This document shows positions 1,314-49,002 of a DNA stretch of 64,000 nucleotides, in pieces; position 1 is the first letter of the stretch; every line of letters begins with the position of its first letter. Below the pieces are notes generated by a model, which saw nothing but the letters and a program-made list of their open reading frames with translations, ran no database searches and was not told where the DNA came from. The position numbers were made by a program, and so were the translations under genes. Source of the stretch: Histomonas meleagridis 2922-C6/04-290x (taxonomy: Eukaryota > Protista > Parabasalia); contig JAANOX010000097.1 in NCBI GenBank assembly GCA_020184695.1, positions 1-64,000 of the forward strand, written 5' to 3'.

Positions 1314-4040
1314 ATGCCTAATAATGATGCTACCACAAATACAGAAGATAAAAATTCGAATAATCTATCAACCAGCTTGAAATTCTTAATCGAGCTTGAG
1401 AAAACTATATTCAGTTTAACCGAAGAAAACATTCAGCCTTCCATTAAAAAAGTATTAAAATTATTTGATTCAAATAATCCCTATACATTTAATACGATTA
1501 TAAGTAGCATCGTTTATAATGCATTTTCATCACCAAAGCATTTATTTGATATTTACTTAAATTTTTTAAAAACACTTCAATCTAAAGAAGAAGAAATTAA
1601 TCAAAGTGACGTTAAACTAATTTCAATTTTTGTCAAACGTATATCTACAAAGAACGCACAAGAATCATATTATTTAATCGAGAAACTAATTGAACAAAAT
1701 TTAATTGATAAAAATATCACAAAAAATATTAATTCAAAATATTTTGCTCATTATAAAATAGAAGAAGAAAACCAAAATCAAACACACAGAGCATTTGGTC
1801 CAATCGTAAAATACTTTATGGATCATTATGAAGAGCTATCAAAGAATGATTGGAAACTTCATAAGCAATTAATTAAAGAAGGAGTTAATCCTAATGAAAT
1901 TTCGAAAATAATTCGAAATGATGAAATTGAAAAACTTCAAGAAATATCATCACTAACAAATTTTGATTTTAATCAAATAATTGAACCATCACTTTATGAA
2001 AGGTGTTCATTTATTAATCAAAAGAATGTTACATTAATTGATTATGCAGCATTTTTTGGATCTGTTAAATGTTTTAAATATTTACTTATGAATGGTGCAA
2101 ATGTAATAAATACAGGTAAATATGCAGTTGCAGGTGGAAATCTTGAAATTATTCATTTGTGTGAACAAAACAATTCATCATTTGAAGATGCATATGAAAC
2201 AGCAATTAAGTTCCATCAAAATGATATCTTTATCTATCTTTATGAAAATAAATTAGAAAAAATACAATCAATACCGAAAATGTCTGAAGATAAAACTAAT
2301 GATTTAGTAAGTTTTTGTATTGAGAAAGATAATTATAAAATTTTAACATTTTTGGAAGAAAAAGGAATTAATGTTAATGCTAATAATATAAACCAATCAT
2401 CAAGAAATGGAAATTTATATCTCGTTAAATATTTCCTTAAAAATAGTCAAATTCCAAAAAATATTTTGCCATATGCTTCAGAATCAGGAAATATCGAACT
2501 TGTGAAATATGTTTTAGAACAAGAAGGAATTGATGTTAATGCAAAATATATTCATTTAAATATTTTGGAATATGTTTTAATAATTTATAATAAGTTTTAA
2601 TGATTTGGAATATGTTTTAATAATTTGAAACAGCACTTCATATAGCAGTTAAAAATAATAATATAGAAATAGTAAAATTACTTTTAGATAAAGGAATTGA
2701 TGTTAATGCAAAAACTATTCATTTGAATAATTTTGGATATGTTTTAATAATTTAGAATATGTTTTAATAATTTTATATATGTTTTAATAATTTGAAATAT
2801 GTTTAAATAACCTGAAACAGCACTTCATATAGCAGTTAGAAATAATAATATAGAAATAGTAAAATTACTTTTAGATAAAGAAATTGATGTTAATGCAAAA
2901 AATATTCATTTTTATAATTTGAAATATGTTTTAATAATTTTATATATGTTTTAATAATTTGAAATATGTTTTAATCATTTGAAACAGCACTTCATATAGC
3001 AGTTAGAAATAATAATATTGAAATAGTAAAATTACTTTTAGATAAAGAAGGAATTGATGTTAATGCAAAAAATATTCATTTGATTAATTTTATATATGTT
3101 TTAATAATTTGGAATATGTTTTAATAATTTGAAATATGTTTTAATAATTTGAAATATGTTTTAATAATTTGAAACAGCACTTCATATAGCAGTTAGAAAT
3201 AATAATATTGAAATAGTAAAATTACTTTTAGATAAAGAAGGAATTGATGTTAATGCAAAAAATATTCATTTGATTAATTTTATATATGTTTTAATAATTT
3301 GGAATATGTTTTAATAATATTATTTATGTTTTAATAATTTTGGATATTTTTTAATAATTTGGAATATGTTTTAATAATTTGAAATATGTTTTAATAATAT
3401 TATTTATGTTTTAATAATTTTGGATATTTTTTAATAATTTGGAATATGTTTTAATAATTTGAAATATGTTTTAATAATTTGAAACATCACTTCATATAGC
3501 AGTTAGAAATCATAATATTGAAATAGTAAAATTACTTTTAGAACAAAAAGGAATTGATGTCAATGCAAAAAGTATTTATTCGAATAATTTAGAATATGTT
3601 TTAATAATTTTATATATGTTTTAATAATTTGGAATATGTTTAAATAATTTGAAATATGTTTAAATAATTTGGAATATGTTTTAATAATCTGAAATATGTT
3701 TTAACAATATTTGACTGCAATTCAAATTGCACAACAAAAAGGTTACACAGAAATAGTAATTTTACTTCTTGGAAAAAGTACAAACGAAAATTCCAATTCA
3801 GACTCTTCTTCTATAAACATCAAATCTTCATTTTCAATAAGATATGGAAATAAAGCATATATTACGAATGATCAAAATCAACTCGAAGATCAAATGTTCA
3901 CAGAAAACAATAAAAAGAAAAGTATCAAAAGTGTTGATGTAAACACTCAAACATATGAAAATCATCAAAATCACAATATACATTATAACAAATATATTCA
4001 CAAAGCAAAACGAAAATACATCAATACTTTAATATTATGA
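1314..4040 (+). CDS. DUF3447-type ankyrin repeat protein; C-terminal repeats split by 17-nt+codon arrays
   Basis: ORF 1314-2600 has DYAAFFGSVKCFKYLLMNGA and AVAGGNLEIIHLCEQ. Stop-free ankyrin cassettes lie at 2630-2716, 2817-2903, 2984-3073, 3174-3263 and 3484-3573, with a terminal segment 3714-4040 (TAIQIAQQKGYTEIV). Confidence 0.75.
2550..3713 (+). repeat. 20-nt minisatellite (ATATGTTTTAATAATTT-NNN) confined to the spacers between ankyrin cassettes
   Basis: Spacers measure 80, 100, 80, 100, 220 and 140 nt, i.e. 4, 5, 4, 5, 11 and 7 units of 20 nt. Confidence 0.9.
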
Positions 4041-12746: not shown

Positions 12747-14421
12747 TCACTGTAACAAGTACAGCAGCGTATCCTGCATTGCCTTTGCTAATCCCTTTGT
12801 CAACACCAGATGTTCCTTCAACTGTTCCTTACTTTTCTCGAATATTTCTTCTTTTGGCTGATTATTTGATTCCAACTGCGCAATTATTATATCTGACAAA
12901 CCAATTCTTTCGAGGGAGTGATGCGATTTCGAAAACATGTCAATAGTTTCGATGCTATTTTCAAAGAAATTAATTCGAAGTTCGATTGCTTTCACAGATT
13001 CTTCATGAAATTCATTCAGTAATCTAATTAATGTCTCAATCATTGGTTTAACTTTAGTATATATTAAGTTCTGTGCGAGTAAAAGCGTTCGTTTTTTGTC
13101 GTCATTAATTTCAATGTTTTCGACCTCTGGGAAAACATTCATTATTTGATTCTTCTCATTTTCTAACTTTTGTTGTTCTTCAAGGATTCTATCAATGCAG
13201 AAGTTAGCAAACTTTTTCTGATTTTCTTCCGAACTTTCGCTTAATCGTTTTTGTAACCTTTCAATTGCCATGTTGCAAAATATTTTCCATTCTTCATTAT
13301 CTTTATCAAGTGCTTTGCTAAACATTTCTTTGTCTTCTGCGATTAGTGTCTTAAATAATAAGTCAAGTAATTTCATTCGTTTAGATTTAATTGTTTCTAC
13401 AATGCGCTTGGCTAATGATACAGCTTTCGCAAACGAAACATATTGTAAACGAATTTCATTAACGACGTTTGTTAATGAGTTTTTCTTGAAAACAATTTCT
13501 TTCGAGTTTATTCTTTCTCGAAGTAAATAACTTGTCTTCTCTTTAACCTCAGAGACAGAATCAGATAAATCCGAAATTTGAAGTTGGAGTTGATCGTCTT
13601 CGTTATCAAAAGGTGGATTTGAACACTTGTACTGAAAAAGTGACGATAGAGTTGATGGGGGGACTTGTGATGTGTCGACATCATCAACGTTTGCGCCACA
13701 CATGATAAGGAGAGAGACAGTACGACTATCTTTCTTTAAAAGAGCAATCTCGAGAATGCTCAGGAATTTGTCTTTAACATCTTTGGCGGGTTCTGAGAGG
13801 TTGACAATGAGATTAGGATCAGCACCTTTGCTTAGAAGAAAAGATGTCACATCAAAATGACAATACTCAATAGAGGCATATAATGGTGGAAGATGTGGTT
13901 GAATAGCAGTGAGTGGTGAGTTATATTCAATTAGTAATTTCACAAATTCAAGATGCCCAAGTGATGCGGCATGATATAAATGAAGTTGAAATATATTTAA
14001 AAAACCCCTTCAACAAACATTTGGACATTGGCTTTGTTTTCAAGTAATACTTTTCCAAATTCTAAAAGATTTTTCCGAATTGCAAGTAAAAGAGGTGTTT
14101 GACCTTTTTTCGAAAGCTCATTCACGTCGCAGCCATACTTGATTAACGTTTTAAGTGATTCTAGTTGTTGAAAAGTAACGGCTGAATGAATGAGATATTG
14201 TTTTTGACACCCTTTTTCAAGAAGAAGTGAAAGAGAATCAATACTTCCATTTTCTACGCAATGCCTTGCAAGAGTTTTAAATGAAAAAAATAAACTTTAA
14301 AAATAATAATTGAACATTAAAAAAAATATATAAACAAAAAAACAATAAAATGAACGGCTTTGTCTATGTTTCCACTGTTATTGATGTAGTTAGTAACAAA
14401 TTCCAAGTCTGTTGAGAACAT
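12747..14421 (-). CDS. Ankyrin repeat plus coiled-coil protein, interrupted by five 17-nt elements
   Basis: ATG at 14421 gives MFSTDLEFVTNYINNSGNIDKA; then 4x(17 nt+codon) at 14355-14276; then TLARHCVENGSID...KKGQTPLLLAIRKN...VEG; a 17-mer at 14005-13989; then QLHLYHAASLGHLEFVKLLIEY joining ORF 12747-13943. Confidence 0.75.
14276..14355 (-). other. Array of four 17-nt intervening elements with single-codon micro-exons
   Basis: GTTCATTTTATTGTTTT ttt GTTTATATATTTTTTTT aat GTTCAATTATTATTTTT aaa GTTTATTTTTTTCATTT aaa. Confidence 0.75.
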
Positions 14422-14619: not shown

Positions 14620-15117
14620 TTATTCGTTGCTAATGTTCAGACCGCGTAAAAAAGCTTCACATCCTTCAACAATATCATTATATGTTGCATCGAAATTTCC
14701 ACTGTACCACGGATCAGAAATGTCTCTAGAACTTCCAGCAAATTCTAGCAACTTGTGTATTTTGTGTTTTGGATCACCACCAGTAATCTTTTGCATATTT
14801 CTAATATTAAGACTATCCATTCCTATAAGATAATCATACTTTTCATAGTCTTTTTTGGTCATCTGTACAGATGTGTGAGGTACCACAGGAATACCAACTT
14901 GGCGTAATTTGTTTACTGTTCCATAATGTGGTGGATTTCCAATTTCTTCTCTACTGGTGGCAGCAGAAGCTATTTTAAATTTAGATTCCAGTCCTCTTTG
15001 TTTTACCATATGAGTGAAAACACTTTCACACATTGTGCTTCGACAAATGTTCCCATGACACACGAATAAAACTCGGATCATATTTTGGTTTGACCATTCC
15101 AGTTTTTGAATAGCCAT
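14620..15117 (-). CDS. Low-molecular-weight protein-tyrosine phosphatase, bacterial type
   Basis: VLFVCHGNICRS P-loop, DYLIGMD, DPWY; alternative start at 15081. Confidence 0.93.
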   Translation of the reverse strand: MAIQKLEWSNQNMIRVLFVCHGNICRSTMCESVFTHMVKQRGLESKFKIASAATSREEIGNPPHYGTVNKLRQVGIPVVPHTSVQMTKKDYEKYDYLIGMDSLNIRNMQKITGGDPKHKIHKLLEFAGSSRDISDPWYSGNFDATYNDIVEGCEAFLRGLNISNE

Positions 15118-27261: not shown

Positions 27262-27333
27262 TGTCTCCGGGCAGGATCGAACTGCCGTCAAGAGCGTGTT
27301 AAACTCCTATTCTAACCATTAGACTACGGAGAC
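27262..27333 (-). tRNA. tRNA-Val(AAC)
   Basis: GTCTCCG TA GTCT AATGGTTA GAAT A GGAGT TT-AAC-AC GCTCT TGAC GGCAG TTCGATC CTGCC CGGAGAC A folds as a cloverleaf. Confidence 0.93.
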
Positions 27334-37160: not shown

Positions 37161-37940
37161 AAAAATGAAATTTTAACATCAAACGCACCATTGAAAAATC
37201 ACTTTTTCAGAGGAATGCATCAAGTTTCCACACACGGAACTCCAAACGGAAGAAACCGCGTTCAAACGGAACACTCGGGAAGTCACTTTTGATTACATTT
37301 CAGGTAGATTTGTAAACTTTTCAATTTCATTATACCCAAAAGAAATTCAATGATTTTAGAGATTTTTCGGGTTGTCAATCGTTAAAAAGTCGAAATAAAG
37401 CATTGAATTATAGTGTTTGTGTTTGTTGGTTGAGAGCGAGGTATGCTTCGGAATGAGCGTCTCAACAAGATTATGATCGCGCCTGGAAAAATATGTCTAC
37501 GTTAAAGTAAATACATTTAATGAACAATTAATAATATAGAAATTTCTATTTTCCAGGAAAATCTTTAAGATGAAATTAATGTTAATCAAAATTTATTTTA
37601 ATTTATACGAGATATAGACGACAATTTAATTATATATCGAATCTAAAAATCATATACAATGAATTTTCCGAGCCCATATCTTCAAGAAAAATTACCATTA
37701 ATTATATAAACCACGAAATATAGAAAATTAAGAAACATTAACGTAATGTTTAACAATGTTTAAATATTATAATTGTAGATTATTATGTGTATTTTCTTTC
37801 ACGTTTTGATGGTAATTTTTGCCAAAACCGTATATTCCACAGAAAAAACAATATCGTTATTTTATTTTGTTGTAACAACAAACCGAATTTCAGGCAAATG
37901 AAAAAGTTCATGTTTTTGAATACAACTGTGGACATTGGAT

Positions 37941-38876
37941 ATGGGAGGATTGTTCAGCTCTATGGGCAAAAAGTCCCTTCCTGAAATTTATATTGATCTC
38001 GAAAATGCAAAGCCAACCACCGAGCAGGAAGAATCTCTTTATAATGAATTTCAGGAAACAATTTTTACTCCTTCAACAGATATATTAGAAAGATTTTCGC
38101 AATATCATGATGGTCAAAAGGAAGCTGCTACCGCCCTTACCAACCCATCACCAGAAACCAAAGAAGCAGCATGGAATGCAATACTTCCCAATGTCAAATT
38201 ACAAATGGAAGTTTATGATTTTGCCAAAGAGATATCAAACAAGTTTTGTCATCTCGTTGATGTTGTTATTAAACTTTCGAATGAAAAAGCAACTGGCGGT
38301 TTTGAAACTATGCCGATTACAATCAAATGTTTTGTTAGTTGCTTTGATATCATATTGAAAATGGACGAAATTAAAATCAAGCTCCCAAAGCTTATCAATG
38401 ATTTAGCATTCTTTCGGAGAAATGCGCCTTCTCATAACTCAGACGGAGATATGGACGGTTTGACAGAAAAGTCAAACATGTCAACGGTTTTTTGGGCCGC
38501 CCCAACGCCGATGCTAACCGAAGTGATCAATTCGCTTCAATCAACATATAGAGACAAGCCAGATGGGTATACAAAATTGTTAGAACTTTTAGGCACTGTG
38601 TGTGATATTTGTACAAGTATTTTAACAAATCATCACCCTGATTCTGAACCAACAAGATTATGTTTACGTTGCATTGTAGGCGCAACATTGATATATGATC
38701 ACATTTCTCCTAATGGTGCATTTGGTGTGAAGCCAACGTTTCATGTTAAAGATGCAATGACACTATTGGTTGAATATCAACCAAAGCAAATTGAATTGAT
38801 CAATGCTATCAAATACTCATCAAAGCACTTGGGCGATGAAAGTGCTGATCCCAAAATCAAAGCATTGTTCAATTAA
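37941..38876 (+). CDS. CYRI: CYRI/FAM49 (CYFIP-related Rac1 interactor, DUF1394)
   Basis: MGGLFS myristoylation-type start, LKMDEIKIKLPKLINDLAFFRR, CLRCIVGATLIYDHISPNGAF, NAIKYSSKHL. Confidence 0.85.
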   Translation: MGGLFSSMGKKSLPEIYIDLENAKPTTEQEESLYNEFQETIFTPSTDILERFSQYHDGQKEAATALTNPSPETKEAAWNAILPNVKLQMEVYDFAKEISNKFCHLVDVVIKLSNEKATGGFETMPITIKCFVSCFDIILKMDEIKIKLPKLINDLAFFRRNAPSHNSDGDMDGLTEKSNMSTVFWAAPTPMLTEVINSLQSTYRDKPDGYTKLLELLGTVCDICTSILTNHHPDSEPTRLCLRCIVGATLIYDHISPNGAFGVKPTFHVKDAMTLLVEYQPKQIELINAIKYSSKHLGDESADPKIKALFN

Positions 38877-39705
38877 AATAATTTGACATCAAAGCCAAAT
38901 CGAATGGTAAAATTCAATAAACGGCTTTTTGTTCAAAAATAATTTAGTTGCAACTATTTGCAAATAGCGAATGTAATTTGACCAATTGGCATTCAGTAAA
39001 AAAAATTTTTTACTCACGAATTTGATTATCAGATGTGTGTACTGATTTGAACACCTTTCTATTCATTAATGTGGAGTGACAATCGGATTTGAATGGAATA
39101 TTCCATTTGAATAAACGAATCAATTTTTGTCACTTTTTATCTGCTACAAAATAACAAAAATCATTCAAAATGCCTTTTTAATAAAAATAATGAACTGGAA
39201 CTGAATGGATAAGGATTATATTCAATAGGTCTTCCATCATACCTTTAAACATTGTCCGATTCAATTTTTTTTATCGTGCATAAATGAATAGATTTTGATC
39301 GTCTGAAGATTGTAATCACCTCGATAAATGTTTTAAATGAATATTCATTAAAAGTGTAATCTCATAATAATGTATGATAATCAGGTCGCATTTTGAAGAA
39401 CAGTAATTATCTCGTTTTAAACTAAAATTTAAGAAAAAGCAATACAAAAAAGCATCACTTTCCGATACTGCCGATTTTTTCCCAGCAGTTTAGTACGTTA
39501 TTCACATAAATGGGGTTAAATTTCTGGCTGTTATTCAAATACTTTACATGGCATTTAACCGGGATTCCCCAAAAATTGAAAGGGTGTTTAACTAATTTCA
39601 GAAACGTTGCCTGGGTTTTGAAAGGGTCTATGGGTGTTTAACTTTTGAAATTCTTGTTCAATTTCAGAACCCCTTTGAATACCAATTGTTTCTTCATTTT
39701 TTTAT

Positions 39706-40836
39706 ATGAATGAACAATGCAACACTGATTATAAGCCAACTGAATACGGCATGCCTCTTGGCGATCTAACACCTGACTATGCAGCTGATAGTGCGCCAAC
39801 ATATAATCCCGAACAAAATATTGAAAATCAAAATGATTATATTAATGAAGATTCTTCAAGTAGCAAGTCTGGATCCGCATTTTCATCTGTAGGCAAAGTA
39901 TTTAAGTACTTCTTTAAATGGTATCGAATTGTTGGTTTAATTGTCACAATATTCTTTTTCTTTTATATGATATGTTTATTTGGAATTTATCATCAAGAGT
40001 ATCTAAGTGCTAAAGATGATGAGACAAAGTCAATCGTTGATGTGCCAGCTTCAGTTCCTGCACTTCATTGGTGCCTTTGGATTGTTGCTCTTGTATTAGG
40101 TATTACCTTAATTTTAGCAAATGGCCCAATCCATTGGGGATTTTCAGTTGCAGCATGCGTTGTGTTTGCAGCATTTTGGATTGCTAATAGTGTTGTTGCA
40201 AGTCAAACAGGCATTTACAAAGCAGCGCAAAACAACATGAAACCCAACGCGTATTATGAGTTAAACGAAAAAATAAGAAATAATAATCCACAAGTAACAC
40301 TCCAAGTTTCAGGATCATATACTAAATTGGAATATGTAAAAGATTCTAACGGCAAATACCACCTTGAACGAAATACATATTACTGTCATTCCAACAAAGT
40401 TACATTTAATAGTGAATCATCTGTTGATAATTCAGACTTTCCAAATATAAGTAATGTCAATGAAGAACTAATTTATGTTCAATTAGATCAAGTCGTTGAA
40501 TGGACAGATACAGCAAAACGGAATATTGACAAACTTAAAGCACAATTCTTACAAGCAATGAAAGACAAATGGTACTCACAAGTAGAAAGGTGGGATCCAG
40601 TATCAGATGTAAGTAGTGTACCTGATTACGTTGCTACTTCAGTTATTTCAGAAAATGAATTAGAAGGATTCTTATCAACAGCTTCAAGAGTTGCTTTGTC
40701 AATATTTTGGGCACCTGCAGCCTTTATCTACAAGTTGGCATCTGCAACGTATTTTATGAGAGGAGCAGTACATAAATTAGAAGCCGAAATGAATACACAA
40801 AGTTATGACTTTTCTGATTGTTATATGACTTGTTGA
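39706..40836 (+). CDS. Multi-pass membrane protein (TMEM151-like)
   Basis: Three N-terminal TMs, a large loop and a C-terminal hydrophobic segment; Inr TCATTTTT upstream. Confidence 0.55.
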   Translation: MNEQCNTDYKPTEYGMPLGDLTPDYAADSAPTYNPEQNIENQNDYINEDSSSSKSGSAFSSVGKVFKYFFKWYRIVGLIVTIFFFFYMICLFGIYHQEYLSAKDDETKSIVDVPASVPALHWCLWIVALVLGITLILANGPIHWGFSVAACVVFAAFWIANSVVASQTGIYKAAQNNMKPNAYYELNEKIRNNNPQVTLQVSGSYTKLEYVKDSNGKYHLERNTYYCHSNKVTFNSESSVDNSDFPNISNVNEELIYVQLDQVVEWTDTAKRNIDKLKAQFLQAMKDKWYSQVERWDPVSDVSSVPDYVATSVISENELEGFLSTASRVALSIFWAPAAFIYKLASATYFMRGAVHKLEAEMNTQSYDFSDCYMTC

Positions 40837-41099
40837 AGAAATTAAATAAAATATGAGTTTTTAGGTTTAATATTTTTGAGTTTCGTTGTTCAAATCCCAA
40901 CAAACTTCATCCATTTCATTCTTTACTTTTTGAATGATACTCATAGAATTTATTATATGAGTTAATGCAAATTTTGTGGACAGCCGATAGAGAATTCAAA
41001 GCAGTTAACCGTAATATCGTTTGGTAAATTTTAAGAAGACGTTAAGTCATTTGTCCAAATTAATATTAAACGTTTTCAGGCCGCCCAAAACAAATCCCA

Positions 41100-42329
41100 A
41101 TGATGAAGACAGAAACAGAAGAAATAGAAATCGTATCACTGCCCCCTTACACAGAACTACGCTTTCTTATGAATGTTAAAGATAGTGTTACAGTCGAAAT
41201 TTCTGATGGCCTTGCCTATTCCTTTTATTGGGAATTACCATACCGCCCTATTACATTTCAACAACAACCATTTCCAATAACTTCATTTGAAACAGGGTGT
41301 AAAGTCAAAATATCTGGTACATATATTTCATACTATATTTCTCCACTTCAAATACCTCAATTTCTTGAAAACGTCAAAGCAGAAGTTGACCGAAACTCTC
41401 CGCCAGTCATTTGTGTGGTGGGTGTTCCAGGTGTTGGAAAAACATCACTATGCAAAAGCATCTGTAATTTCATTTTGCGAAACACCGGTAAGTATCCAAT
41501 TTACGTAAACGCTGATCCCGATCAAGCTCTTTTTTCTCCTCCAGGCTGCATTGGTGCCTTGCCAGTTACTGATTTGATCAGTAACAAAGGTTTTACTTTT
41601 ACTGATCCACTTGTATACTTTTTTGGAAACACTGTAATTCAAGAAGATCGTCAAAAGCTTTATGTAGATCAAATGGCTGAGCTTTCAATACATATTCAAA
41701 AACGTCGGCAAAATTCAATAGGTTTTGATGGTGGGGTAATTATCGATTTTCCATCTGTTACGTCCCCGTGTATTAGTAGTAGTCTTGATTCTGTTATTGA
41801 ATCTTTTGGAGTATCATTAATTGTCGTATTAGCAAATGACAAATTACATCATCAAATTCGACGCAAATACCCACAAATTCCTATCGAAAATCTTCCAATG
41901 ATTTCTGGGTGTATACCTCTAAGCAAAGAAATGAAAAATGTAATACGCGATAATATGATAAAACAATATTTTTATGGAGATGGTTCACCTGAATTACTAC
42001 CAACGAACCATTTGATATCAAAAGAAAATGTTGGGTTATTTAGTTTAGGTCCATTGGTTAATCGACATGATCAAATATTGATGAAAATGGAAACACCAGA
42101 CCCTAAAAACCCGTCCCCAGTAGCCTTCGGCTCTAGGTTAGAAAACTGTATTTTGGCTTTGGTGGGGAATTCAACAAAAAATGAAATGTGGAAACAAAAC
42201 GCTTTGGGATTTTTACACGTCATTAACTTTACAGAGGAAGGGCAGCTGAATGTGTTGAAGCCTGCAAGAACTGCTTTGCCATCTTCGACAATAATAGCAA
42301 GTTTGATAAAATGGACAGCTAGTCAATAA
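41100..42329 (+). CDS. CLP1: CLP1 polynucleotide 5'-kinase / mRNA cleavage factor
   Basis: ELRF N-terminus, GVPGVGKTS P-loop, ADPDQ..FSPPGCIGA, LVYFFG, GGVIID, ALGFLHV. Confidence 0.88.
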   Translation: MMKTETEEIEIVSLPPYTELRFLMNVKDSVTVEISDGLAYSFYWELPYRPITFQQQPFPITSFETGCKVKISGTYISYYISPLQIPQFLENVKAEVDRNSPPVICVVGVPGVGKTSLCKSICNFILRNTGKYPIYVNADPDQALFSPPGCIGALPVTDLISNKGFTFTDPLVYFFGNTVIQEDRQKLYVDQMAELSIHIQKRRQNSIGFDGGVIIDFPSVTSPCISSSLDSVIESFGVSLIVVLANDKLHHQIRRKYPQIPIENLPMISGCIPLSKEMKNVIRDNMIKQYFYGDGSPELLPTNHLISKENVGLFSLGPLVNRHDQILMKMETPDPKNPSPVAFGSRLENCILALVGNSTKNEMWKQNALGFLHVINFTEEGQLNVLKPARTALPSSTIIASLIKWTASQ

Positions 42330-42364
42330 ATAAAAATTTTATTTACTACATTTTTCTTGCTATG

Positions 42365-42646
42365 CTAAGTGCTTTGATGAGATATTAAAAATGATTCAAT
42401 CAAATTGTTGCATTCAGTTAGATGTTGATGAGATGAAAGAGAAAGTGTTGTCATGTTGCGTATGCTATCAACAGTGTTTGAAATATGTTTAGGATTATGT
42501 GTCTTTTTAATATTAAATAAGGATTTTAATTCATCAAGTTCTGTAACAGCAGAGTTACGAACCTGACACATAGCCGAAGAGTAAGGGTTACTAATATAAA
42601 ATAATGCTTTGGAATAATCTTCGTGAGCAGATTTAAAAGAAGTCAT
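42365..42646 (-). CDS. Small hypothetical protein
   Basis: 93-aa ATG-initiated ORF with coding-like composition, convergent with CLP1. Confidence 0.5.
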   Translation of the reverse strand: MTSFKSAHEDYSKALFYISNPYSSAMCQVRNSAVTELDELKSLFNIKKTHNPKHISNTVDSIRNMTTLSLSSHQHLTECNNLIESFLISHQST

Positions 42647-43483
42647 TTCTTATTTCATAAATGGCAAAAAAATTGAATGAAAAAAATTGTGTCAAAAACG
42701 CACTTTTCTATCGTAGGTTAGCAACCATTGGAATTCATTATGGAAAAAGCTCAAGAAATAGAAAACAAAGAAAGTTCAAAACGTAAGCAAAAGGTGAGGA
42801 GCTTATCCAATAATTTCAAATGCTTCAAAATATTATATATAATTTGAAAACTTTCATTACAAGGGTTATTTCACGGTGTTTTATTTGTTTTTATGTGGAC
42901 AAAATACATAAATTTATTAAAAATAGTGTTGAATTATACCTCACAATAAGGGTTAGAATAATTATTATATAATGCTATTATTATTAATTTATACAGAACA
43001 TGTTTTATTTTTATGTGTTTGACATCAAAATGACATTGGTACTTCAAATTTAAAACGTTTTTGTGTTTTATTACTGAAAATCAATAAAGGCTTTGAGAAG
43101 GAAACCACAGAAAAATTCGTGTAAATTTTGTTTTGTATTGGGATTTTACTTTATCTTAATGTACATTAAAATTTCATATCAAAATTTTAAATAATATTAA
43201 ATGTAATGCAAAATTTGGAATATTATTAATTGCACTTTAATACTGCTAAAATAAATCTGAAATTTCGAAGCAAACATTTTTACCATATGATGCATTCGAG
43301 AAAATGTTAAATTATTTAAATATAATTCAACAATTAATGTATAATAAGATTAAAAAAGGTCGATTTTCAGTGAAGAAAAATTAATCATTTCGTATCCTGA
43401 TGCGGAACGATTTCCAATGTAAACTATATAAAATTGAGGCTTAATTTAAATCATAGCACTTTTTATGTAAATCATTAAATCAA

Positions 43484-46290
43484 ATGATCACCAATGGAAA
43501 CCAAGAAAACGAACCTTTGCATATGTTAAAAACTCTCCAAAATATCACATTAAACATGAACGAAAGAAGCAAGTTGAGTGATCTTCAAATGACCTTAGAT
43601 CTTTTTAATACTAATTTACCAATTTCTTTTAATTTTGTCTTTGTCATTCTGTTTATTCATCTTTTGTTTCTAGGATGAAAGACTTCAATATTTATTTTGA
43701 ATTTTTGCAGGCAGTTGAAGCAAAAGAAAAAGAATTATTTAAAAATGATTACAATATTTTTGATATTTTTTCACATATTCTTCTTATCAAAACAACGCAA
43801 GAAGCAGATTATCTTTTAGAAAAACTCTATGAGAAAAATATTATTAGTGATGAAATTCTTAAAGGCAAAATGTCATTTTATTTTGCACAATACAAAACTT
43901 TAGATGAGCTCAAAAATTGTCTTGTTCAACCTTATTCAAAACGGTTTTTTGAAAAATATGAAGAACTATCAAAGAATAATTTTGAACTTCATAAGCAACT
44001 AATTAAAGAAGGTGTTAATCCAAATGAAATTGCGAAAATGATGATTAAGAAAAACTTCAAGAAATATCATCACGAGATAATTTTAATTTTAATCAAATAA
44101 TTGAACCATCACTTTATGAACGATGTTCATTCGTTAACCAAGAAAATGTTGCATTAATTAATTATGCAGCATTTTTTGGATCAGTTAAATGTTTTAAATA
44201 TTTACTTATGAATGGTGCTAAAATAGATAATACAGGTAAATATGCAATTGCTGGAGGAAACATAGAGATAGTTCATATATGTGAACAAAATCATTCATCA
44301 TTTGAATATGCAGATTTACCAGCAATTGAATTCCATCGCTATGATATTATGCAATATGTTCATGAAAACGAAATTTTAGACACAAGATCTTGTGTATATA
44401 CTGGAAGAGAATGTATCATCCATAATAACTATGAACTTTTCACATATTTCAAAGATAAAGGAATGGAAAGCGATGATTCTTTTATTAATGAAGCAGCAAA
44501 GAATGGAAATATATTTCTTGTTCAATACTTTAATGAAGAAGTTCAAATACCAAATGAAGCTTTAGTGTCAGCTTCAAAATCAGGTAATTTAGAATTAGTT
44601 AAATATCTTATAACACAAAAGAAAATCAATGTAAATGTTAAAGATATTAAATATTTATATTTAATGTTAATTCCGTGGAAAATGGATTTATTTAAAATAA
44701 TTGATTTTTATTGTTATTGTTTAATACAGCACTTATAGTTGCATCTGAATATGGGAATATTGAATTAGTTAAATTTCTTCTCGAGCAAGAAGAAATTAAT
44801 GTTAATGCAAGAAATGTTTTTTAGTTATGTTTAAAATATCTTTCTAAAATTTGGTGTATTTTAATGATGTATGGAATTAATTGAGATCATTTAAAACAGC
44901 ACTTATTTGGGCATCACAACATAATAATATTGAGATATTCAAAATGCTTATTGAACAAAATGATATTTATGTTAACACAAGCGATATTTACCAAACTTTT
45001 TTACTGTTTATCTGAATGAATTAGATTTCATTTTGATATTTTTATACTGCAATTATGGATCATTTGAAACAGCACTTATCTATGCATCTTTAAATGACAG
45101 CATAGAAATAGTTAAATTACTTCTTGAACAAAAAGGAATTGATATTAATGCTAAAACTATTTATTTGTTTTATTTAAAATTTATTTTAATAATTTAATGT
45201 TTCTAAATAATATTTGGAAATTATTTAAAATATTTAAAACAGCACTTATGAAAGCATCTTGTAAAGGTTATACAAAAATAGCTAAATTACTTCTTGAACA
45301 AGAAGGAATTGATATTAATGCTAAAACTATTTATTTGTTTTATTTAATATTTATTATAATAATTTTGGGATATTTCATAATATTATTTGGAAATTATTTG
45401 AATTATTTTGGACAGCACTTATGTATGCATCTTGGAAAGGGAATATATATATAGTTAAATTACTTCTTGAACATAAAGGAGTTGATATTAATGTTAAAGA
45501 TATTTATTTGTTTTATTTAATATTTATTTTAATAATTTTCTATTTCAAAATAATATTTGGAAATTATTTAAATTATTTTGGACAGCACTTATGATGGCAT
45601 CTGAAAATGGTCATACAGAAATAGTTAAATTACTTCTTGAGCAAGAAGGAATTGATATTAATGCTAAAAATATTCGTTTGTTTTATTTGATATTTATTTT
45701 GATAATTTCAGATTTCAAAATAATATTTGGAAATTATTTGAATTATTTGATACAGCACTTATTTGGGCATCTTCAACTGGTTGTACAGAAATAGTTAAAT
45801 TACTTCTTGAACATAAAGGAATTGATATTAATGCTAAAAATATTCATTTGTTTAATTTATTATTTTTTTATCTAATTTTATATTTCAAAATAATGTTTGG
45901 AAATTATTTAAATTATTTGATACAGCACTTGTGTATGCATCTGAATATGGTCATACAGAAATAGTTAAAGAACTTCTTGAGCAAGAAAATTGATATTAAT
46001 GCTAATACTATTTATTTGTTTTATTTAAAATATTTTTTAATAATTTGATGTTTCTAAATAATATTTGGAATTGATTTAAATTATATGAAAAAGCACTTAT
46101 TAAATCTTCTTCAAAAGGTTATATAGAAATTGTTAAATTACTTCTTAAACAAGAAGGAATTGATATTAATGTTAAAAATATTTATTTGTTTTATATAACA
46201 TTTAATAATGTAAAATTTCAAAAAAAATTTGGAATTTTTTTCATAAGTCGTTTAACAGCAATTAAAATATGTAGTGTCATTGATCAATGA
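43484..46290 (+). pseudogene. DUF3447-type ankyrin gene, paralogous to 1314-4040; split by 17-nt+codon arrays and carrying frameshifts
   Basis: Frameshifts at ~43645 (1 nt), ~44040 (~10-nt deletion) and ~45989 (2 nt). Nine 90-nt-type cassettes start at 44726, 44896, 45069, 45239, 45412, 45582, 45752, 45922 and 46090; the terminal TAI repeat starts at 46255. The lesions could be assembly errors. Confidence 0.65.
44646..46254 (+). other. Ten spacer arrays of 17-nt intervening elements with single-codon micro-exons
   Basis: Spacers of 80, 80, 83, 80, 83, 80, 80, 80, 80 and 75 nt; seven of the first nine place a Gly codon in the penultimate micro-exon. Confidence 0.75.
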
Positions 46291-46447
46291 AAAGATTCAG
46301 CAAAACAGATGCTCAAAAAAATGATGAAAAACGGTCAGTTTTTATATTTACTAGAAATCGCGATTTATTCCAATAAATATTAAATGTTAATTCCTAATAT
46401 TATTTAAATTTACAATATGATACGGCGGGAAGTTTTTTTTTACCTGA

Positions 46448-46681
46448 GTACGTACAAAACAAACAGCCAGTAAATCTACTGTGGTTAGACTCCTCGTAAA
46501 TCACTCTGTCCTAATGAGATATGTAATCCAACACCAGTTATTGTAACAAGGCACTTTTTCTCTTCGTGAAATCATTGGCTTCTTTGAAGATACAAATCTT
46601 TGCGTTATTCATGCAAACCGTGTTACAATTATGGTGCGTGATATCAAACTTGCACAAAAAACTCAAGCAACTAAATCATAA
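46448..46681 (+). pseudogene. Histone H3 pseudogene with internal deletion
   Basis: RTKQTASKST..TPRKSL and [32 protein letters not shown]; frameshifted, no start codon. Confidence 0.85.
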
Positions 46682-47057
46682 GATGGGATTGTTTTTGTGA
46701 ATGAAATGAAAAGAACTTCTCAAACAATATTTAAGCATTTTTCATATATACTTATATTAGATAAAATAAACACCTTTTTTTCTTTCGATAGTATTATAAT
46801 TCTAAGTTTGGTGAGAAAATTGTTTTTTAACCACCAATTTTGGAATTCCCTTAAAACATTTTTAAACAAATATTAAATGAGTTCTATTAAAGTCGTTGAC
46901 AAGGAAAATTAAATAAAACTTAAGATACAACGTTATAATTGAAAATGGATGGTTCGTATCGACCAGATAATCACACAAAACTAAAACACGTTATGTTGCC
47001 AATACGATAAAATATTTTTCTTATGATATAAAGCATACAATTCCGACACTTTTCTCA

Positions 47058-49002
47058 TCAAAGATGAACAAAATCATCGTCATTGAAGTCATTTGCAAGA
47101 GGATCATCTACAACATAAACAAATATCGAAATTATTATTATAATAATACGATAACAACACAAACGATAATTATAATAATATTGTTGTTACTATTGTTGTG
47201 AATACTTTCATTTGAAATTGTAAAGAAATTCGAATAAAATCGGAATTCCGTAGTATATGCAAATGCTGTGTATTCATAATAAATGTAACTCATTATAAGA
47301 TAAGTCTCTTGTGAATCTATTAATGTTTGTGTGAATGAATTGATATAATAACTGTGATAAGAAAGTGTTAATGTTATTGACTCAAAAGAAGTTAAAATAT
47401 ATGAATGTGATAATATAACATTGGTTAAAACTGTAACTTCAGATAAACTTGATATTAAATCATATGACGCAGTAAATGTATTACTTTGTATGAATGCATT
47501 TGTTTCAGTATATGTATTACTTATAGTATATGTATTTGTTGGATTTATTTCCATGAAATAATGTACTGTTTCACCAATTTTTCCAAAATTATCAATTGGT
47601 GCAGCATGAATGTAAACTTCATTCATAATTTTTGATATAACTTTATTAGTTTTCAAACATTTGTTTAAATTTTCATTTGTAATTATTGTATTTTCATTTT
47701 TATAAATTATATAATAATATTCTTCTGCATATGTTTTTAATATAAATTCATTAATATTTTTCTCATATTCTTTAATTCAATCTGAATTTCTACCAATTAC
47801 TTTATAATATATTGTGTCTACAATACTATTAGTAAATAATTCAACACTTCTTTGATTATCAATACGTTGTACATAAGAAGAATTTAATATAGGAGTAATA
47901 ACAGAATTATCATACATATAAAGTAATGGAGTCCTTTAATATAAATAATATATTGTGTTTGCAAGTAATTTTCGTTCATATAATTGGGCAACACCGCCAA
48001 GATGACCAATTTGAATCATAGCTGTATTCATATAAGTTGTTGAATAATAAAAAGGATTTCCATATCTTAATTCATCATATCCACTAAGATTTAATACATA
48101 ATTCTTCGATTCAGTATAATCGGAGCTCACTTCAATGTTAAAATAAATTGGTTCACCTAATTCCATCCATACATCACCAACCGCGACATTACTATTTGAA
48201 TGTGTTATGTTAATTGTTAAATTTCCATCTGGAATTTTTATGGATAATTAGTTAATAAGCCACGTTGTATTACTCGCATTTCATCGCTATAATATCGATA
48301 CCATCGTGTTGATAATGTTCCACTTGAACAATATGATGAATCAACATTCATCAGTTCCTAATAATATACCAAATTTTTGAGAAATTTTCCATAACTATTA
48401 TCATTTCCAAAATAATATCCAGCAGTGTTATGCCCAAGTTAAACACCATTGCCAAGATCGATGTATTCTGATAGGTATTGAAGCATTTCAGCACTTGGAA
48501 CAGCTTCAACACCTCCGTTAATATCCATGAATCCAATAACAATGGTATCATATTCTTTCAGTTGTTCGAATGTGAGTTTTTTGAAATCAACTACAGGAAT
48601 TGGATCAACATGAATGATTGATTCGTTAGTATAAGGGTTATAACCTAAACCATCAACTCTATTTCCAACATTAGAACTGTAATATGTGGCACCTTCAATC
48701 CAAGCTTTCAGCATTGCATATGAAGGAAAACAGCTTTTATCAATGTCCTCTGTATCAAAATGAAATTCATAACAAGACGATTCGTCATATGGATATACTC
48801 GAATACTTGTTGTTGTATTATAATCAAATGCACTAAGAGGTCTCCAATTCAATCCATTCGGACTTGAATAAGCTGTATATGTTGAATTTGGTGGTGTTAA
48901 TGTTCCAGTCTAATTGAGAACAATATGGTTGTCTTCACATTTAACAACAAAGTCAGGAGTTTCATTTGCACTGACAAAACAAATAAAAAAGATTAAACGC
49001 AA
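47058..49002 (-). pseudogene. Type I surface-protein pseudogene
   Basis: Signal-like LRLIFFICFVSA with a TTG start, nonsense codons at 48910 and 48439, further frameshifts, T/S/Y stalk, TM and DDPLANDF tail. Confidence 0.75.

What the first reader, a model, noticed from the sequence alone, without database searches (positions are those of the whole stretch)
44646..46254. 17-nt intervening elements alternating with single codons rebuild the ankyrin hairpin: candidate novel micro-splicing or bypass system
Seen: each ankyrin cassette encodes 30 aa (TAL...AKx) and lacks the 4-residue x-x-G-x hairpin. In its place is an 80-nt spacer that parses as 4x(17 nt + 1 codon). Example 45502-45581: atttatttgttttattt AAT atttattttaataattt TCT atttcaaaataatattt GGA aattatttaaattattt TGG, giving KD-NSGW-TAL. 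Others give RN-KGGK, KT-KNGK, KN-DQGD, KN-IYGD and NT-KDGE. The 83-nt spacer at 45329 has one extra codon (NWDGW). Gly is penultimate in 7 of the first 9 spacers, matching the established ankyrin G-x-T-(P/A)-L motif. The first three spacers are strongly diverged in sequence yet keep 80/80/83 nt. The 17-mers start mostly ATT/GTT/ATA/AAT and end mostly TTT. They have no AG acceptor and no trichomonad ACTAAC branch motif, and they always fall between codons. Inference: they are removed or skipped, by non-canonical ultra-short splicing, RNA editing, ribosomal hopping or DNA excision. I know of no description of such a system.
Basis: partly seen in the sequence, partly recalled or inferred. Interest (0 to 1): 0.97.

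Follow-up and report, generated by a model that had tools for sequence, protein, structure and literature searches.

The report
Tandem 17-nt micro-introns in ankyrin genes
In the poultry parasite Histomonas meleagridis, the loop of each ankyrin repeat is encoded as single codons separated by AT-rich 17-base inserts that are present in DNA but missing from RNA: an undescribed, extremely short and non-canonical kind of intron in a lineage thought to be almost intron-free.

Summary
At 44646-46254, 90-nt ankyrin cassettes alternate with 80/83-nt spacers that parse as 4 x (17 nt + 1 codon). Register 0 is the best of 20 registers for diversity (3.9x) and for GC (35% in the codon slots, 7% in the 17-mers).

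The window is Histomonas meleagridis. A second strain's independent assembly is identical across the array.

- **RNA evidence.** Assembled contigs from three runs labelled 'RNA?' skip the spacers and carry 11-15 letters in their place (for example K-D-Y-F-G-R-TAL). The DNA run has none of these junctions. One exact-match RNA-run contig lacks exactly 17 nt.
- **Comparative evidence.** In an uncultured relative, an orthologous gene keeps the single codons (F-N-N/K-K) and a solitary element at the same codon, there GT..AG, and lacks one element exactly. Homologues on three other metagenome contigs have mutually diverged spacers of the same layout, with Gly in slot 3 in 4 of 4.

Best reading: fixed-length (17, perhaps 18 nt) phase-0 micro-introns, R-T-W-Y-R-T-T…A-T-T-T, without a 3' AG. 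They are removed from RNA, probably by a derived spliceosome that sets the 3' cut by distance.

I found no published description. First readers flagged the same architecture on at least eight other pieces of this genome; none was followed up. This particular gene copy also carries two frame defects that no 17-nt removal repairs.

The parts
43675..44100 (+). Upstream ORF (141 aa), the N-terminal region of the same gene family. It overlaps the next frame, which opens at 44049, with a -1 offset at about 44047-44051.
   Evidence: Homologue P0023 is contiguous across this point (...EIAKILRNDDLEKLQEISS...). The window switches frame after EIAKMMIK. No plausible 17-mer sits here, so this is a frame defect rather than an element.
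44208..44645 (+). Uninterrupted exon holding a DUF3447 domain and two ordinary ankyrin repeats. It ends ...NVNVKD.
   Evidence: Pfam DUF3447 at 1.9e-8 and Ank_2 at 5e-7; ORF list.
44646..44725 (+). Spacer 1, 80 nt and diverged. The last element ends at 44722 and the final codon AAT (44723-44725) is kept. The internal parse (NWDN or NVDN) is uncertain.
   Evidence: RNA-run contig X4 record 22 matches 44722-44815 exactly and departs from the genome on both sides. Parse scores are weak.
44726..44815 (+). Cassette 1 (TALIVASEYGNIELVKFLLEQEEINVNARN).
   Evidence: An exact RNA-run contig ends exactly at 44815.
44816..44895 (+). Spacer 2: elements at 44816, 44836, 44856 and 44876 (17 nt each); slots AAA GGT GGA AAA (KGGK).
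   Evidence: The four-element parse scores 12.2, against 0.7 for the next best.
44896..44985 (+). Cassette 2.
44986..45068 (+). Spacer 3, 83 nt and diverged. The length fits four elements plus five codons. The parse (TRYTE) is uncertain.
45069..45158 (+). Cassette 3.
45159..45238 (+). Spacer 4: elements at +0, +20, +40 and +60; slots AAA AAT GGA AAA (KNGK).
   Evidence: RNA-only joints run from 45155 to 45236.
45239..45328 (+). Cassette 4.
45329..45411 (+). Spacer 5, 83 nt: elements at 45329, 45349, 45372 and 45392; slots AAT, TGG GAT, GGA, TGG (NWDGW).
   Evidence: Best parse scores 55.8, against 40.0 for the next. A 3-nt shorter variant is seen in contigs at 45366.
45412..45501 (+). Cassette 5.
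45502..45581 (+). Spacer 6: slots AAT TCT GGA TGG (NSGW).
   Evidence: RNA-only joint 45502 to 45582 with 11 letters in between.
45582..45671 (+). Cassette 6.
45672..45751 (+). Spacer 7: slots GAT CAG GGA GAT (DQGD).
   Evidence: RNA-only joint 45672 to 45750.
45752..45841 (+). Cassette 7.
45842..45921 (+). Spacer 8: slots ATT TAT GGA GAT (IYGD).
   Evidence: RNA-only joint 45838 to 45922 with 15 letters in between.
45922..46009 (+). Cassette 8, 88 nt. A 2-nt deletion puts a TGA in frame at 45991-45993, so the conceptual ORF ends ...ELLEQEN*.
   Evidence: The other strain's assembly is identical here.
46010..46089 (+). Spacer 9: slots AAA GAT GGA GAA (KDGE). It now lies downstream of the stop.
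46090..46179 (+). Cassette 9, out of frame with the ORF.
46180..46196 (+). Single element ATTTATTTGTTTTATAT. This is the best candidate for the exact 17-nt gap seen in RNA (boundary ambiguous by up to 2 nt).
   Evidence: X4 record 24 is 613 nt with 0 mismatches and 17 gap letters over 46153-46782. X3 record 16 and X6 record 32 start at 46195, the branch point expected between the forms with and without this element. DNA contig X1 record 7 runs through it. The position of the gap is inferred, not read.
2550..3713 (+). Second ankyrin gene. Its six spacers of 80/100/80/100/220/140 nt are made of 4 to 11 near-identical 20-nt units (ATATGTTTTAATAATTT plus a codon).
   Evidence: Every spacer length is a multiple of 20. 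RNA was not examined for this locus.
14276..14355 (-). Third ankyrin gene: an 80-nt spacer of four GTTYA...TTT elements; slots TTT AAT AAA AAA (FNKK).
   Evidence: The orthologue in a relative (L001) has TTT+17+AAT+17+AAT+17+AAA, 63 nt.
13989..14005 (-). Solitary element GTTTTTTAAATATATTT between ...FVEG and QLHLYHAAS... It joins a 90-codon exon to a 413-codon exon.
   Evidence: The orthologue has a 17-nt GTTTATTTATTATTTAG at the same codon.

Best explanation
The 17-mers are intervening sequences that are transcribed and then cut out of the RNA. Each one sits between two codons (phase 0). Removing the four in a spacer joins the single codons between them into the x-x-G-x beta-hairpin that links one ankyrin repeat to the next.

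They form a lineage-specific class of fixed-length micro-introns: 17 nt, possibly sometimes 18, AU-rich, with the consensus R1-T2-W3-Y4-R5-T6-T7 ... A14-T15-T16-T17. The class occurs in Histomonas meleagridis and in related uncultured organisms known from metagenome contigs.

Most likely a derived spliceosome removes them. It would read the 5' motif and place the 3' cut by distance rather than by an AG.

The 20-nt unit (intron plus codon) duplicates in tandem and spreads together with the ankyrin cassette. Each copy-number change therefore adds or removes exactly one loop residue without breaking the frame.

**Shown:**
- the architecture and its non-randomness;
- presence in DNA (two assemblies and DNA-run contigs);
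- absence of the spacers from abundant RNA-run contigs, which carry 4-5 hairpin codons in their place;
- conservation across species of length, position and retained codons.

**Inferred:** that every element of this particular array is removed one by one; that the machinery is a spliceosome; and the ruler mechanism. I put the core claim (RNA-level removal that keeps the codons) at about 0.9, and the spliceosomal part at about 0.55-0.6.
For: **1. RNA against DNA.**
- In runs X3, X4 and X6 (labelled 'RNA?') many contigs jump across the spacers. Examples are 45502 to 45582, 45672 to 45750 and 45838 to 45922.
- They carry 11-15 letters in between, which read in frame as hairpins: AAGGAGGAAGA gives D-KGGR-T, and GATTATTTTGGACGA gives K-DYFGR-T.
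- DNA run X1 shows depth 0 at 14 of the 15 listed joints.
- At one and the same position (before 45597) the RNA consensus is GAT AAA AAT GGA AAA | ACAGCACTT, while the DNA consensus is TTTAAATTATTTAAA | ACAGCACTT.
- X4 record 22 matches 44722-44815 exactly and departs from the genome at the last element of spacer 1 and at the first base of spacer 2.
- X4 record 24 (613 nt, 0 mismatches) lacks exactly 17 nt. X3 and X6 contigs begin at 46195, the expected branch point.
- GGA is kept intact in RNA, which fixes the register. A shift of -1 would give GGT, and a shift of +1 would destroy the glycine codon.

**2. Comparative evidence.**
- The orthologue of gene 12747-14421(-) in a relative (39% protein identity) has three elements where Histomonas has four, with the codons F-N-N-K against F-N-K-K.
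- The intervening exon is 270 nt in both, and a 17-nt element sits at the same codon in both.
- L046, L045 and L050 are homologues at 42-54% identity on other metagenome contigs. They show 90-nt cassettes, 80-nt spacers and the hairpins DLGN, SDGR, NDGC, NNGK, NSGR and K-YGK.
- Histomonas paralogue L049 has hairpins with only two elements, for example NALDNR[17]G[17]W-TAL.

**3. Statistics.** The slots are 3.9x more diverse and 5x more GC-rich than the 17-mers, and register 0 is the best of 20.

**4. Conceptual product.** With the elements removed, one ORF runs from 44208 through seven full repeats.

**5. For a spliceosome.**
- The 5' end R-T-W-Y-R-T-T is colinear with the T. vaginalis type B 5' motif, where positions +3/+4 are A/T and C/T and +8/+9 are T (PMC12316389).
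- 9 of 60 elements start with GT.
- The orthologous solitary element in the relative is GT...AG.
- Fixed 16-17-nt spliceosomal introns exist in mikrocytids (PMC10245619).
- The spacer has no RNA structure of its own (z = +0.8), which argues against structure-guided endonuclease splicing.
Against: - No read-level or full-length cDNA sequence was seen for this gene. The RNA evidence is assembled contigs, mostly from paralogues at 90% likeness or more.
- The tool warns that for X1 and X4 some joints were not counted, and the run kind is itself a guess ('RNA?').
- The position of the 17-nt gap in X4 record 24 is inferred, not read.
- The elements fail the defining features of spliceosomal introns. 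Position 1 is A in 50 of 60 contexts, the last base is T in 60 of 60, and there is no AG and no ACTAAC.
- On diverged homologues the 3' ends vary (TT, AA, TA, TC), so no sequence rule yet explains single-nucleotide precision.
- Three-nucleotide exons between 17-nt introns are without precedent for a spliceosome.
- The gene in the finding has two frame defects, so selection on this copy is doubtful.
Confidence: 0.62

Rival explanations
1. RNA-level excision by machinery other than the spliceosome. Candidates are a dedicated endonuclease-ligase pair or a guide-RNA-directed system that recognises U-rich 17-mers or the exon junctions and removes a measured length.
For: Both termini are non-canonical: A at +1 in 50 of 60 contexts, T at the last base in 60 of 60, and variable 3' ends on L046 and L049. 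Length is the most conserved feature. The exons between elements are only 3 nt. No parabasalid branch motif is present.
Against: The 5' motif resembles trichomonad type B 5' splice sites, and some copies are GT...; one orthologue is GT..AG. The spacer has no stable structure of the kind that tRNA-endonuclease or IRE1 substrates need. No candidate enzyme or guide is known.
Confidence: 0.22
2. The joined RNA contigs come from other, uninterrupted ankyrin genes, and the interrupted arrays are untranslated decaying repeats. The 17+3 pattern would then be a by-product of a 20-nt minisatellite.
For: Most RNA contigs laid at 90% likeness are from paralogues. Counts for X1 were truncated. This gene has two frame defects. 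Locus A does behave as a 20-nt minisatellite.
Against: The listed joints have zero depth in the DNA run. DNA loose ends at the same positions show 17-mer sequence. An exact-match RNA contig has a 17-nt gap. Single codons and element positions are conserved between species at 39% protein identity, and diverged non-repetitive spacers on L046 keep 80 nt with Gly in slot 3. Slot diversity and GC behave like coding sequence.
Confidence: 0.06
3. Programmed DNA elimination: the elements are excised from the genome in a subset of nuclei or life stages, as ciliate IESs are.
For: The elements are short, AT-rich and precisely bounded, which superficially resembles IESs.
Against: Two independent assemblies and the DNA-run contigs keep every element, and no joined form appears in DNA. 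RNA libraries hold both forms. No TA boundaries are present. Parabasalids have no known germline/soma split.
Confidence: 0.03
4. Translational bypass or frameshifting: the mRNA keeps the spacers and ribosomes hop over each 17-mer.
For: The elements are small and fall between codons. Known bypass elements are 27-55 nt.
Against: Abundant RNA contigs already lack the spacers. Four consecutive hops per repeat would be extremely inefficient.
Confidence: 0.02

Closest known systems
Mikrocytid (Mikrocytos mackini) 16-17-nt spliceosomal introns (PMC10245619)
   Same: Extremely short introns with an almost invariant length (16 or 17 nt), sequences conserved among copies, and removal confirmed against transcriptome data.
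   Different: In mikrocytids 224 introns lie in 179 genes, so they are mostly solitary, and the genes are largely housekeeping. Here the elements are concentrated in ankyrin hairpins, usually in tandem with 3-nt exons between them. They mostly start with A, never end with AG in this window, and occur in an unrelated lineage (Parabasalia).
Trichomonas vaginalis / T. stableri type B short introns, 23-28 nt (PMC12316389)
   Same: Same phylum and uniformly short. The 5' motif G-T-W-Y followed by T-rich sequence is colinear with R-T-W-Y-R-T-T here, and the filler is poly-T.
   Different: Type B introns keep GT/AG and the fused TCTAAC...ACAG branch/3' motif. There are at most one or two per gene and only dozens per genome. 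The Histomonas elements are 6 nt shorter than the shortest of them, lack AG and CTAAC, and occur up to 30-40 per gene.
Stentor coeruleus 15-16-nt and Bigelowiella natans nucleomorph 18-21-nt introns (as cited in PMC12316389; otherwise from my own knowledge)
   Same: Tiny introns of fixed size. This implies a spliceosome with tight geometric constraints.
   Different: As far as I recall, those keep GT-AG. They are not arranged as tandem arrays around single codons.
U12-type (AT-AC) introns (own knowledge)
   Same: Either A or G is accepted at +1. The 5' motif RTATCCTT partly resembles RTWYRTT. The 3' terminal nucleotides are known to be flexible, and the 3' site is chosen by distance from the branch point.
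   Different: No TCCTTAAC branch motif and no AC end. U12 introns are not this short. A minor spliceosome is not established in parabasalids.
Animal and plant 3-nt microexons (PMC7392893, PMC8632122, PMC8831610; listed, not read)
   Same: Single-codon exons can be spliced.
   Different: From my own knowledge, those are isolated and flanked by long canonical introns. They are not runs of 3-nt exons between 17-nt introns.
Translational bypass elements (T4 gene 60; mitochondrial byps of Magnusiomyces) and ciliate IESs (own knowledge)
   Same: Short insertions that interrupt coding sequence and are ignored in the final product.
   Different: Bypass elements stay in the mRNA, and IESs are removed from DNA. 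Here the elements are in DNA and absent from RNA.

Membership tests
Spliceosomal U2-type (GT-AG) introns | GT at the 5' end | tested here: not met
   Position 1 is A in 50, G in 9 and T in 1 of 60 distinct contexts. Position 2 is T in 55 of 60.
Spliceosomal U2-type (GT-AG) introns | AG at the 3' end | tested here: not met
   The last base is T in 60 of 60 in-window contexts, and positions 15-17 are TTT. Only the orthologous solitary element in the relative ends in AG.
Spliceosomal U2-type (GT-AG) introns | Parabasalid branch/3' motif ACTAAC...ACAG | tested here: not met
   The motif is absent. Only A-rich positions 10, 11 and 14 are seen (a possible YNAAT at positions 8-12).
Spliceosomal U2-type (GT-AG) introns | Present in DNA and precisely absent from mature RNA | tested here: met
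   Joints occur in the RNA runs only. There is an exact RNA contig with a 17-nt gap. DNA contigs and two assemblies retain the elements. The evidence is at contig level and partly at family level.
Spliceosomal U2-type (GT-AG) introns | Lariat formation and dependence on snRNPs | not testable with these tools
   This needs branch mapping or a functional perturbation.
Fixed-length ultrashort introns (mikrocytid / Stentor type) | Narrow length distribution below 20 nt | tested here: met
   Length is 17 nt in all confidently parsed elements of the window and in L001, L045, L046 and L050. Three elements in paralogue L049 parse best as 18 nt.
Fixed-length ultrashort introns (mikrocytid / Stentor type) | Canonical termini retained | tested here: not met
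   See the two rows on GT and AG above.
U12-type AT-AC introns | 5' RTATCCTT, branch TCCTTAAC and 3' AC | tested here: not met
   Only R-T-W-Y at positions +1 to +4 and T-T at +7/+8 agree. There is no CC at +5/+6, no branch motif and no AC.
Structure-guided splicing (tRNA endonuclease BHB, IRE1/HAC1 type) | Stable stem-loops or bulge-helix-bulge at both cut sites | tested here: not met
   A 140-nt fold across spacer 6 gives -15.7 kcal/mol, against -18.2 for shuffles (z = +0.83). 160 of 200 shuffles fold at least as well.
Ciliate-type internal eliminated sequences | Removed from somatic DNA; TA boundaries | tested here: not met
   The elements are present in both assemblies and in the DNA-run contigs. 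The joined forms have depth 0 in DNA.
Translational bypass elements | The gap is retained in mature mRNA | tested here: not met
   The dominant RNA contigs lack the spacers.
Ankyrin repeat proteins (host gene) | 33/34-residue repeat with x-x-G-x-T-[AP]-L hairpin and helix motifs | tested here: met
   The uninterrupted N-terminal part hits Pfam DUF3447 and Ank_2. The cassettes read TAL..AS..G..EIVKLLL...G.DIN. The conceptual product has 34-residue repeats with D/N-x-x-G-x-TAL. The conceptual product itself was not scanned against Pfam.

The most novel reading that the evidence does not exclude
The elements are not removed by a conventional spliceosome. An excision system would measure about 17 nt from a short U-rich 5' signal, with no 3' sequence signal at all. 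It might be a radically modified spliceosome acting as a molecular ruler or a separate RNA cut-and-rejoin machine. The 20-nt intron-plus-codon unit would then be an evolvable module that lengthens, shortens and diversifies the target-binding loops of a very large ankyrin family without ever shifting the frame.
Probability: 0.3. Interest if true: 0.95.

Novelty: new variant of a known kind. Interest (0 to 1): 0.86.

Why it matters
- **Intron counts.** Parabasalids are textbook intron-poor eukaryotes. The H. meleagridis genome paper reports at most one intron in about 5% of genes (PMC8529796). If each ankyrin hairpin holds up to four or more 17-nt introns, the genome may contain very many unannotated introns.
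- **Annotation.** The ankyrin family, one of the largest in these parasites, would be systematically mis-annotated. In this window the interrupted gene 12747-14421(-) is fused to a neighbouring phosphatase in the public model (P0012).
- **Mechanism.** Introns of 17 nt with A or G at +1, no 3' AG and 3-nt exons between them test the limits of splice-site recognition. They make the question of how short and how signal-poor an intron can be directly testable.
- **Evolution.** The intron-plus-codon unit offers a frame-neutral way to vary a binding loop.
- **Reach.** Related contigs in gut metagenomes, including human-gut samples, suggest the feature extends to relatives of Histomonas.

Tried and rejected
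- **A single canonical intron per spacer.** No register gives GT..AG. A 68-nt single intron would leave no contiguous x-x-G-x. RNA keeps GGA next to the last codon, although the two lie 17 nt apart in DNA.
- **One element per 80-nt spacer with 21 retained codons.** For S1 this is refuted by the RNA contig boundary at 44722.
- **Other registers.** A shift of -1 predicts GGT and a shift of +1 destroys Gly. RNA shows GGA.
- **Search for solitary elements that join ORFs in the window.** Only 13989-14005(-) is real. The hit at 38080 is false, because the CYRI gene is one ORF from the ATG at 37942.
- **A 17-nt element to join ORF 43675-44100 to the ankyrin ORF.** Rejected: comparison with P0023 shows a plain frame defect.
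- **A 17-nt removal to repair the H3-like ORF at 46451-46690.** The frames do not fit (reasoned).
- **Protein searches for RNA-derived products.** The database holds only genome-derived models for this organism. The query 44208-44735 found nothing.
- **Metagenome scan with alignment A1.** It returned only generic ankyrin hits.
- **Synteny with the relative around the Clp1 gene.** The ankyrin array is not syntenic there.
- **Generic Viterbi and greedy parsers with 17/18-nt elements.** They over-cut AT-rich coding DNA and were discarded.
- **Rfam on the window.** Only a tRNA was found.
- The second sequencing-run search was not used, because no design would have been decisive without another read-laying run.
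Full report
**1. What is in the sequence**

Region 44646-46254 (+) is the repeat part of an ankyrin gene. Its uninterrupted N-terminal part (44208-44645) hits Pfam DUF3447 and Ank_2. Tandem Repeats Finder reports a 170-nt period.

Parsing gives ten cassettes. Nine of them are 90 nt and encode 30 aa (TAL..AS..G..EIVKLLLEQ.GIDINAKx). They are separated by spacers of 80/80/83/80/83/80/80/80/80/75 nt.

Each 80-nt spacer splits into four 17-mers, each followed by a 3-nt slot. The slots read NWDN, KGGK, KNGK, NSGW, DQGD, IYGD and KDGE. The 83-nt spacer at 45329 has one extra codon (NWDGW).

**2. Is it more than chance?**

- **Diversity.** Among the recently duplicated spacers S4-S9, pairwise diversity is 0.43 in the slots and 0.11 in the 17-mers. 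Register 0 is the best of 20 registers, although the GGA slot never varies.
- **Composition.** GC is 35% in the slots, similar to the coding cassettes (28%), and 7.4% in the 17-mers. Register 0 is again best.
- **Distribution.** A position matrix built from the elements finds such arrays only at three ankyrin loci in the 64-kb window. These are 2550-3713 (+), 14276-14355 (-) and this one. It finds none in the AT-rich intergenic DNA. The matrix was trained on these loci, so this shows only that AT-rich DNA in general does not mimic the pattern.
- **Consensus.** Over 60 distinct contexts the element reads R1 (A 50, G 9), T2, W3, Y4, R5, T6, T7, then A14, T15, T16, T17 (T in 60 of 60).

**3. Organism and reality of the DNA**

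A neighbouring Clp1-like ORF has Tritrichomonas foetus as its best named relative, at 48% identity. The public protein that overlaps the minus-strand ankyrin gene is labelled Histomonas meleagridis. [quoted passage not shown]

The other strain's independent assembly is 100% identical to window 35103-48329. That span includes every 17-mer and the 2-nt-short cassette 8. A paralogous array is also identical in both assemblies (L047 = L048). The elements are therefore real DNA.

**4. RNA evidence (the only read-laying run)**

The data are Logan contigs, not reads. The run kinds are guesses ('RNA?', 'DNA?').

- **Joints.** In X3, X4 and X6 many contigs jump over the spacers: 45155 to 45236, 45502 to 45582, 45672 to 45750 and 45838 to 45922. 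They carry 11-15 other letters in between, which read in frame as hairpins. Examples are GAT-A + AAGGAGGAAGA + ACA, giving D-K-G-G-R-T, and AAA + GATTATTTTGGACGA + ACA, giving K-D-Y-F-G-R-T.
- **DNA control.** The DNA run X1 has depth 0 at 14 of the 15 listed joints.
- **Loose ends.** Before 45597 the RNA consensus is GATAAAAATGGAAAA|ACAGCACTT. The DNA consensus at the same place is TTTAAATTATTTAAA|ACAGCACTT.
- **Source of the contigs.** Most of these contigs come from paralogues at 90% likeness or more, so this is family-level evidence.

Two records are locus-specific:
- X4 record 22 (160 nt) matches 44722-44815 without a mismatch. It leaves the genome at the last element of spacer 1, keeping the final codon AAT, and at the first base of spacer 2.
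- X4 record 24 (613 nt, 0 mismatches) spans 46153-46782 with exactly 17 missing letters. X3 record 16 and X6 record 32 are gap-free and begin at 46195. That is the point where a form lacking 46180-46196 and a form retaining it would converge, because both have AT just before 46197. DNA contig X1 record 7 runs straight through.

Spacer-bearing contigs also occur in the RNA runs, at much lower depth (about 50-100, against thousands for the joined forms). That fits precursor RNA or DNA carry-over.

The intact GGA in RNA fixes the register of excision to the 17-mers as parsed.

**5. Comparative evidence**

*The minus-strand gene.* Gene 12747-14421 (-) has an 80-nt spacer after codon 22 and a solitary 17-mer 270 nt further on. 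Its orthologue (P0013, 39% identity) lies on contigs from several gut metagenomes. One of them is a human stool sample, judging from the record name (L042), so the relative may be Dientamoeba; that is an inference.

| Feature | Histomonas | Relative (L001) |
|---|---|---|
| Spacer | 80 nt: 17+TTT+17+AAT+17+AAA+17+AAA | 63 nt: TTT+17+AAT+17+AAT+17+AAA |
| Exon between spacer and solitary element | 270 nt | 270 nt |
| Solitary element, same codon | GTTTTTTAAATATATTT | GTTTATTTATTATTTAG |

The retained codons are conserved as amino acids, the 17-nt length is conserved while the sequence is not, and one element is present or absent exactly.

*Homologues of this finding's N-terminal domain on other metagenome contigs:*
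- **L046** (48% identity) has four mutually diverged 90-nt cassettes and a longer C-terminal repeat. Its five spacers are 83/80/80/80/80 nt and the slots read DLGN, SDGR, NDGC and NNGK.
- **L045** (54% identity) gives NSGR.
- **L050** (42% identity) gives NAKN-K[17]Y[17]G[17]K-TAL. Here the first hairpin codon is fused to the exon.

With G at roughly 8% in these spacers (my estimate), GGN in slot 3 of four unrelated spacers is far beyond chance.

*Histomonas paralogue L049.* It has hairpins with two or three elements, for example NALDNR[17]G[17]W-TAL. Three elements parse best as 18 nt, which gives the canonical D-F-A-G-R-TPF. A homopolymer error inside an element could not be excluded.

**6. 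The conceptual product and the state of this copy**

Removing the elements yields one ORF from 44208 through seven complete 34-residue repeats. The copy is nevertheless damaged:
- Cassette 8 lacks 2 nt, which puts a TGA at 45991-45993.
- The family's N-terminal region (43675-44100) is out of frame with the rest, at about 44047-44051, relative to the contiguous homologue P0023.

Both defects are in both assemblies, and no 17-nt removal repairs either. RNA depth over the unique part of the gene is low. This locus is therefore probably a truncated or decaying member of a very large family. It still displays the architecture, and at 46180-46196 apparently the processing too.

**7. Mechanism**

What is shown is removal at the RNA level, in phase 0, with the codons in between kept. 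The machinery is not shown.

*For a derived spliceosome:*
- The 5' motif R-T-W-Y-R-T-T is colinear with the 5' motif of T. vaginalis type B introns (PMC12316389).
- Some copies start with GT.
- One orthologue is GT..AG.
- Uniform 16-17-nt spliceosomal introns exist in mikrocytids (PMC10245619).
- A possible YNAAT lies at positions 8-12. It would put a branch A about 7 nt from the 3' end, similar to the spacing in trichomonads. This is an inference.

*Against a conventional spliceosome:*
- A at +1 in most copies.
- No AG, and variable 3' ends in diverged homologues.
- 3-nt exons.

Because length is the best-conserved property, I infer that the 3' cut is set by distance. Structure-guided endonuclease splicing is unlikely, because the spacer folds no better than shuffles. 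DNA elimination and ribosomal bypass are contradicted.

**8. Evolution (inference)**

The 20-nt unit behaves as a minisatellite at locus A. There the spacers hold 4, 5, 4, 5, 11 and 7 near-identical units, giving loops such as GIGE, WRYEE and YGYWGEYWGEE. Every gain or loss of a unit changes the loop by one residue without shifting the frame.

Within the array of this finding, framework codons and 17-mers are nearly identical between copies. The hairpin slots and the surface positions of the helices differ. That is the pattern expected for recent duplication or homogenisation combined with diversifying selection on the binding surface.

**9. Novelty**

Seven full-text searches found no description of 17-nt introns, single-codon exon arrays or unusual splicing in Histomonas or Dientamoeba. 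The genome paper reports scarce introns, at most one per gene. The T. foetus 2026 paper treats its predicted introns as unvalidated.

First readers of this scan flagged the same architecture on at least eight other pieces of this genome and at two other loci of this window. None of these had been followed up. I verified the in-window ones.

I class the finding as a new variant of a known kind (ultrashort introns). It departs from every defining sequence feature of that kind.

Noticed in passing
window 12747-15090 (-): The public gene model P0012 ('low molecular weight phosphotyrosine protein phosphatase [Histomonas meleagridis]', 481 aa) fuses the phosphatase ORF at about 14620-15090 to the C-terminal part of the ankyrin gene. 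It skips the exons that are interrupted by 17-mers. This is probably an annotation artefact caused by the elements.
   Followed up: partly
window 44040-44060: The family's N-terminal ORF (43675-44100) and the ankyrin ORF (open from 44049) overlap with a -1 frame offset. Homologue P0023 is contiguous there (…EIAKILRNDDLEKLQEISS…). This is a frame defect rather than a 17-nt element.
   Followed up: yes
window 45985-45993: Cassette 8 lacks 2 nt (GAAGGAATT has become GAAAATT), which creates an in-frame TGA at 45991-45993. The other strain's assembly is identical here.
   Followed up: yes
window 46417-46690 (+): A short histone H3-like ORF reads RTKQTASKST…LL, then an in-frame TAA at 46543-46545, then [37 protein letters not shown]…. 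About 10 residues of the fold are missing, and the nearest ATG is in another frame. It looks like a degenerate H3 or CenH3-like copy. RNA contigs from canonical H3 paralogues pile up on its conserved end.
   Followed up: partly
window 2550-3713 (+): The intron-plus-codon unit ATATGTTTTAATAATTT+NNN has expanded as a 20-nt minisatellite, with up to 11 units and a 100-nt higher-order duplication at 3264-3483. It predicts ankyrin loops of 4-11 residues rich in G, E, Y and W. RNA was not examined.
   Followed up: partly
window 45239-45841 (cassettes 4-7): The framework codons of the cassettes are identical at the nucleotide level. Codons 4-5, 8-9 and 11-13 differ at nearly every copy.
   Followed up: partly
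L049:4340-4694 (Histomonas paralogue, other contig): Three elements parse best as 18 nt (for example GTTTTTTTAATATTATTT), giving the canonical hairpins D-F-A-G-R-TPF and D-G-K-G-W-PPI. Either the length class is 17-18 nt, or homopolymer errors sit inside the elements.
   Followed up: partly
window 37942-38873 (+): An intact CYRI/FAM49-type Rac1-binding protein gene (Pfam PF07159, 2e-59). My ORF-joining scan flagged it falsely.
   Followed up: yes
window 27262-27333 (-): A tRNA gene, the only Rfam hit in the window.
   Followed up: no
L001, L042-L044 (metagenome contigs): An uncultured parabasalid has 59% identity in Clp1 and 39% in the ankyrin gene to Histomonas, with about 29-33% GC. It recurs in several gut metagenomes, including one labelled as a Hadza/Nepal human stool sample. 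It may be Dientamoeba fragilis, and it carries the same 17-nt elements.
   Followed up: partly
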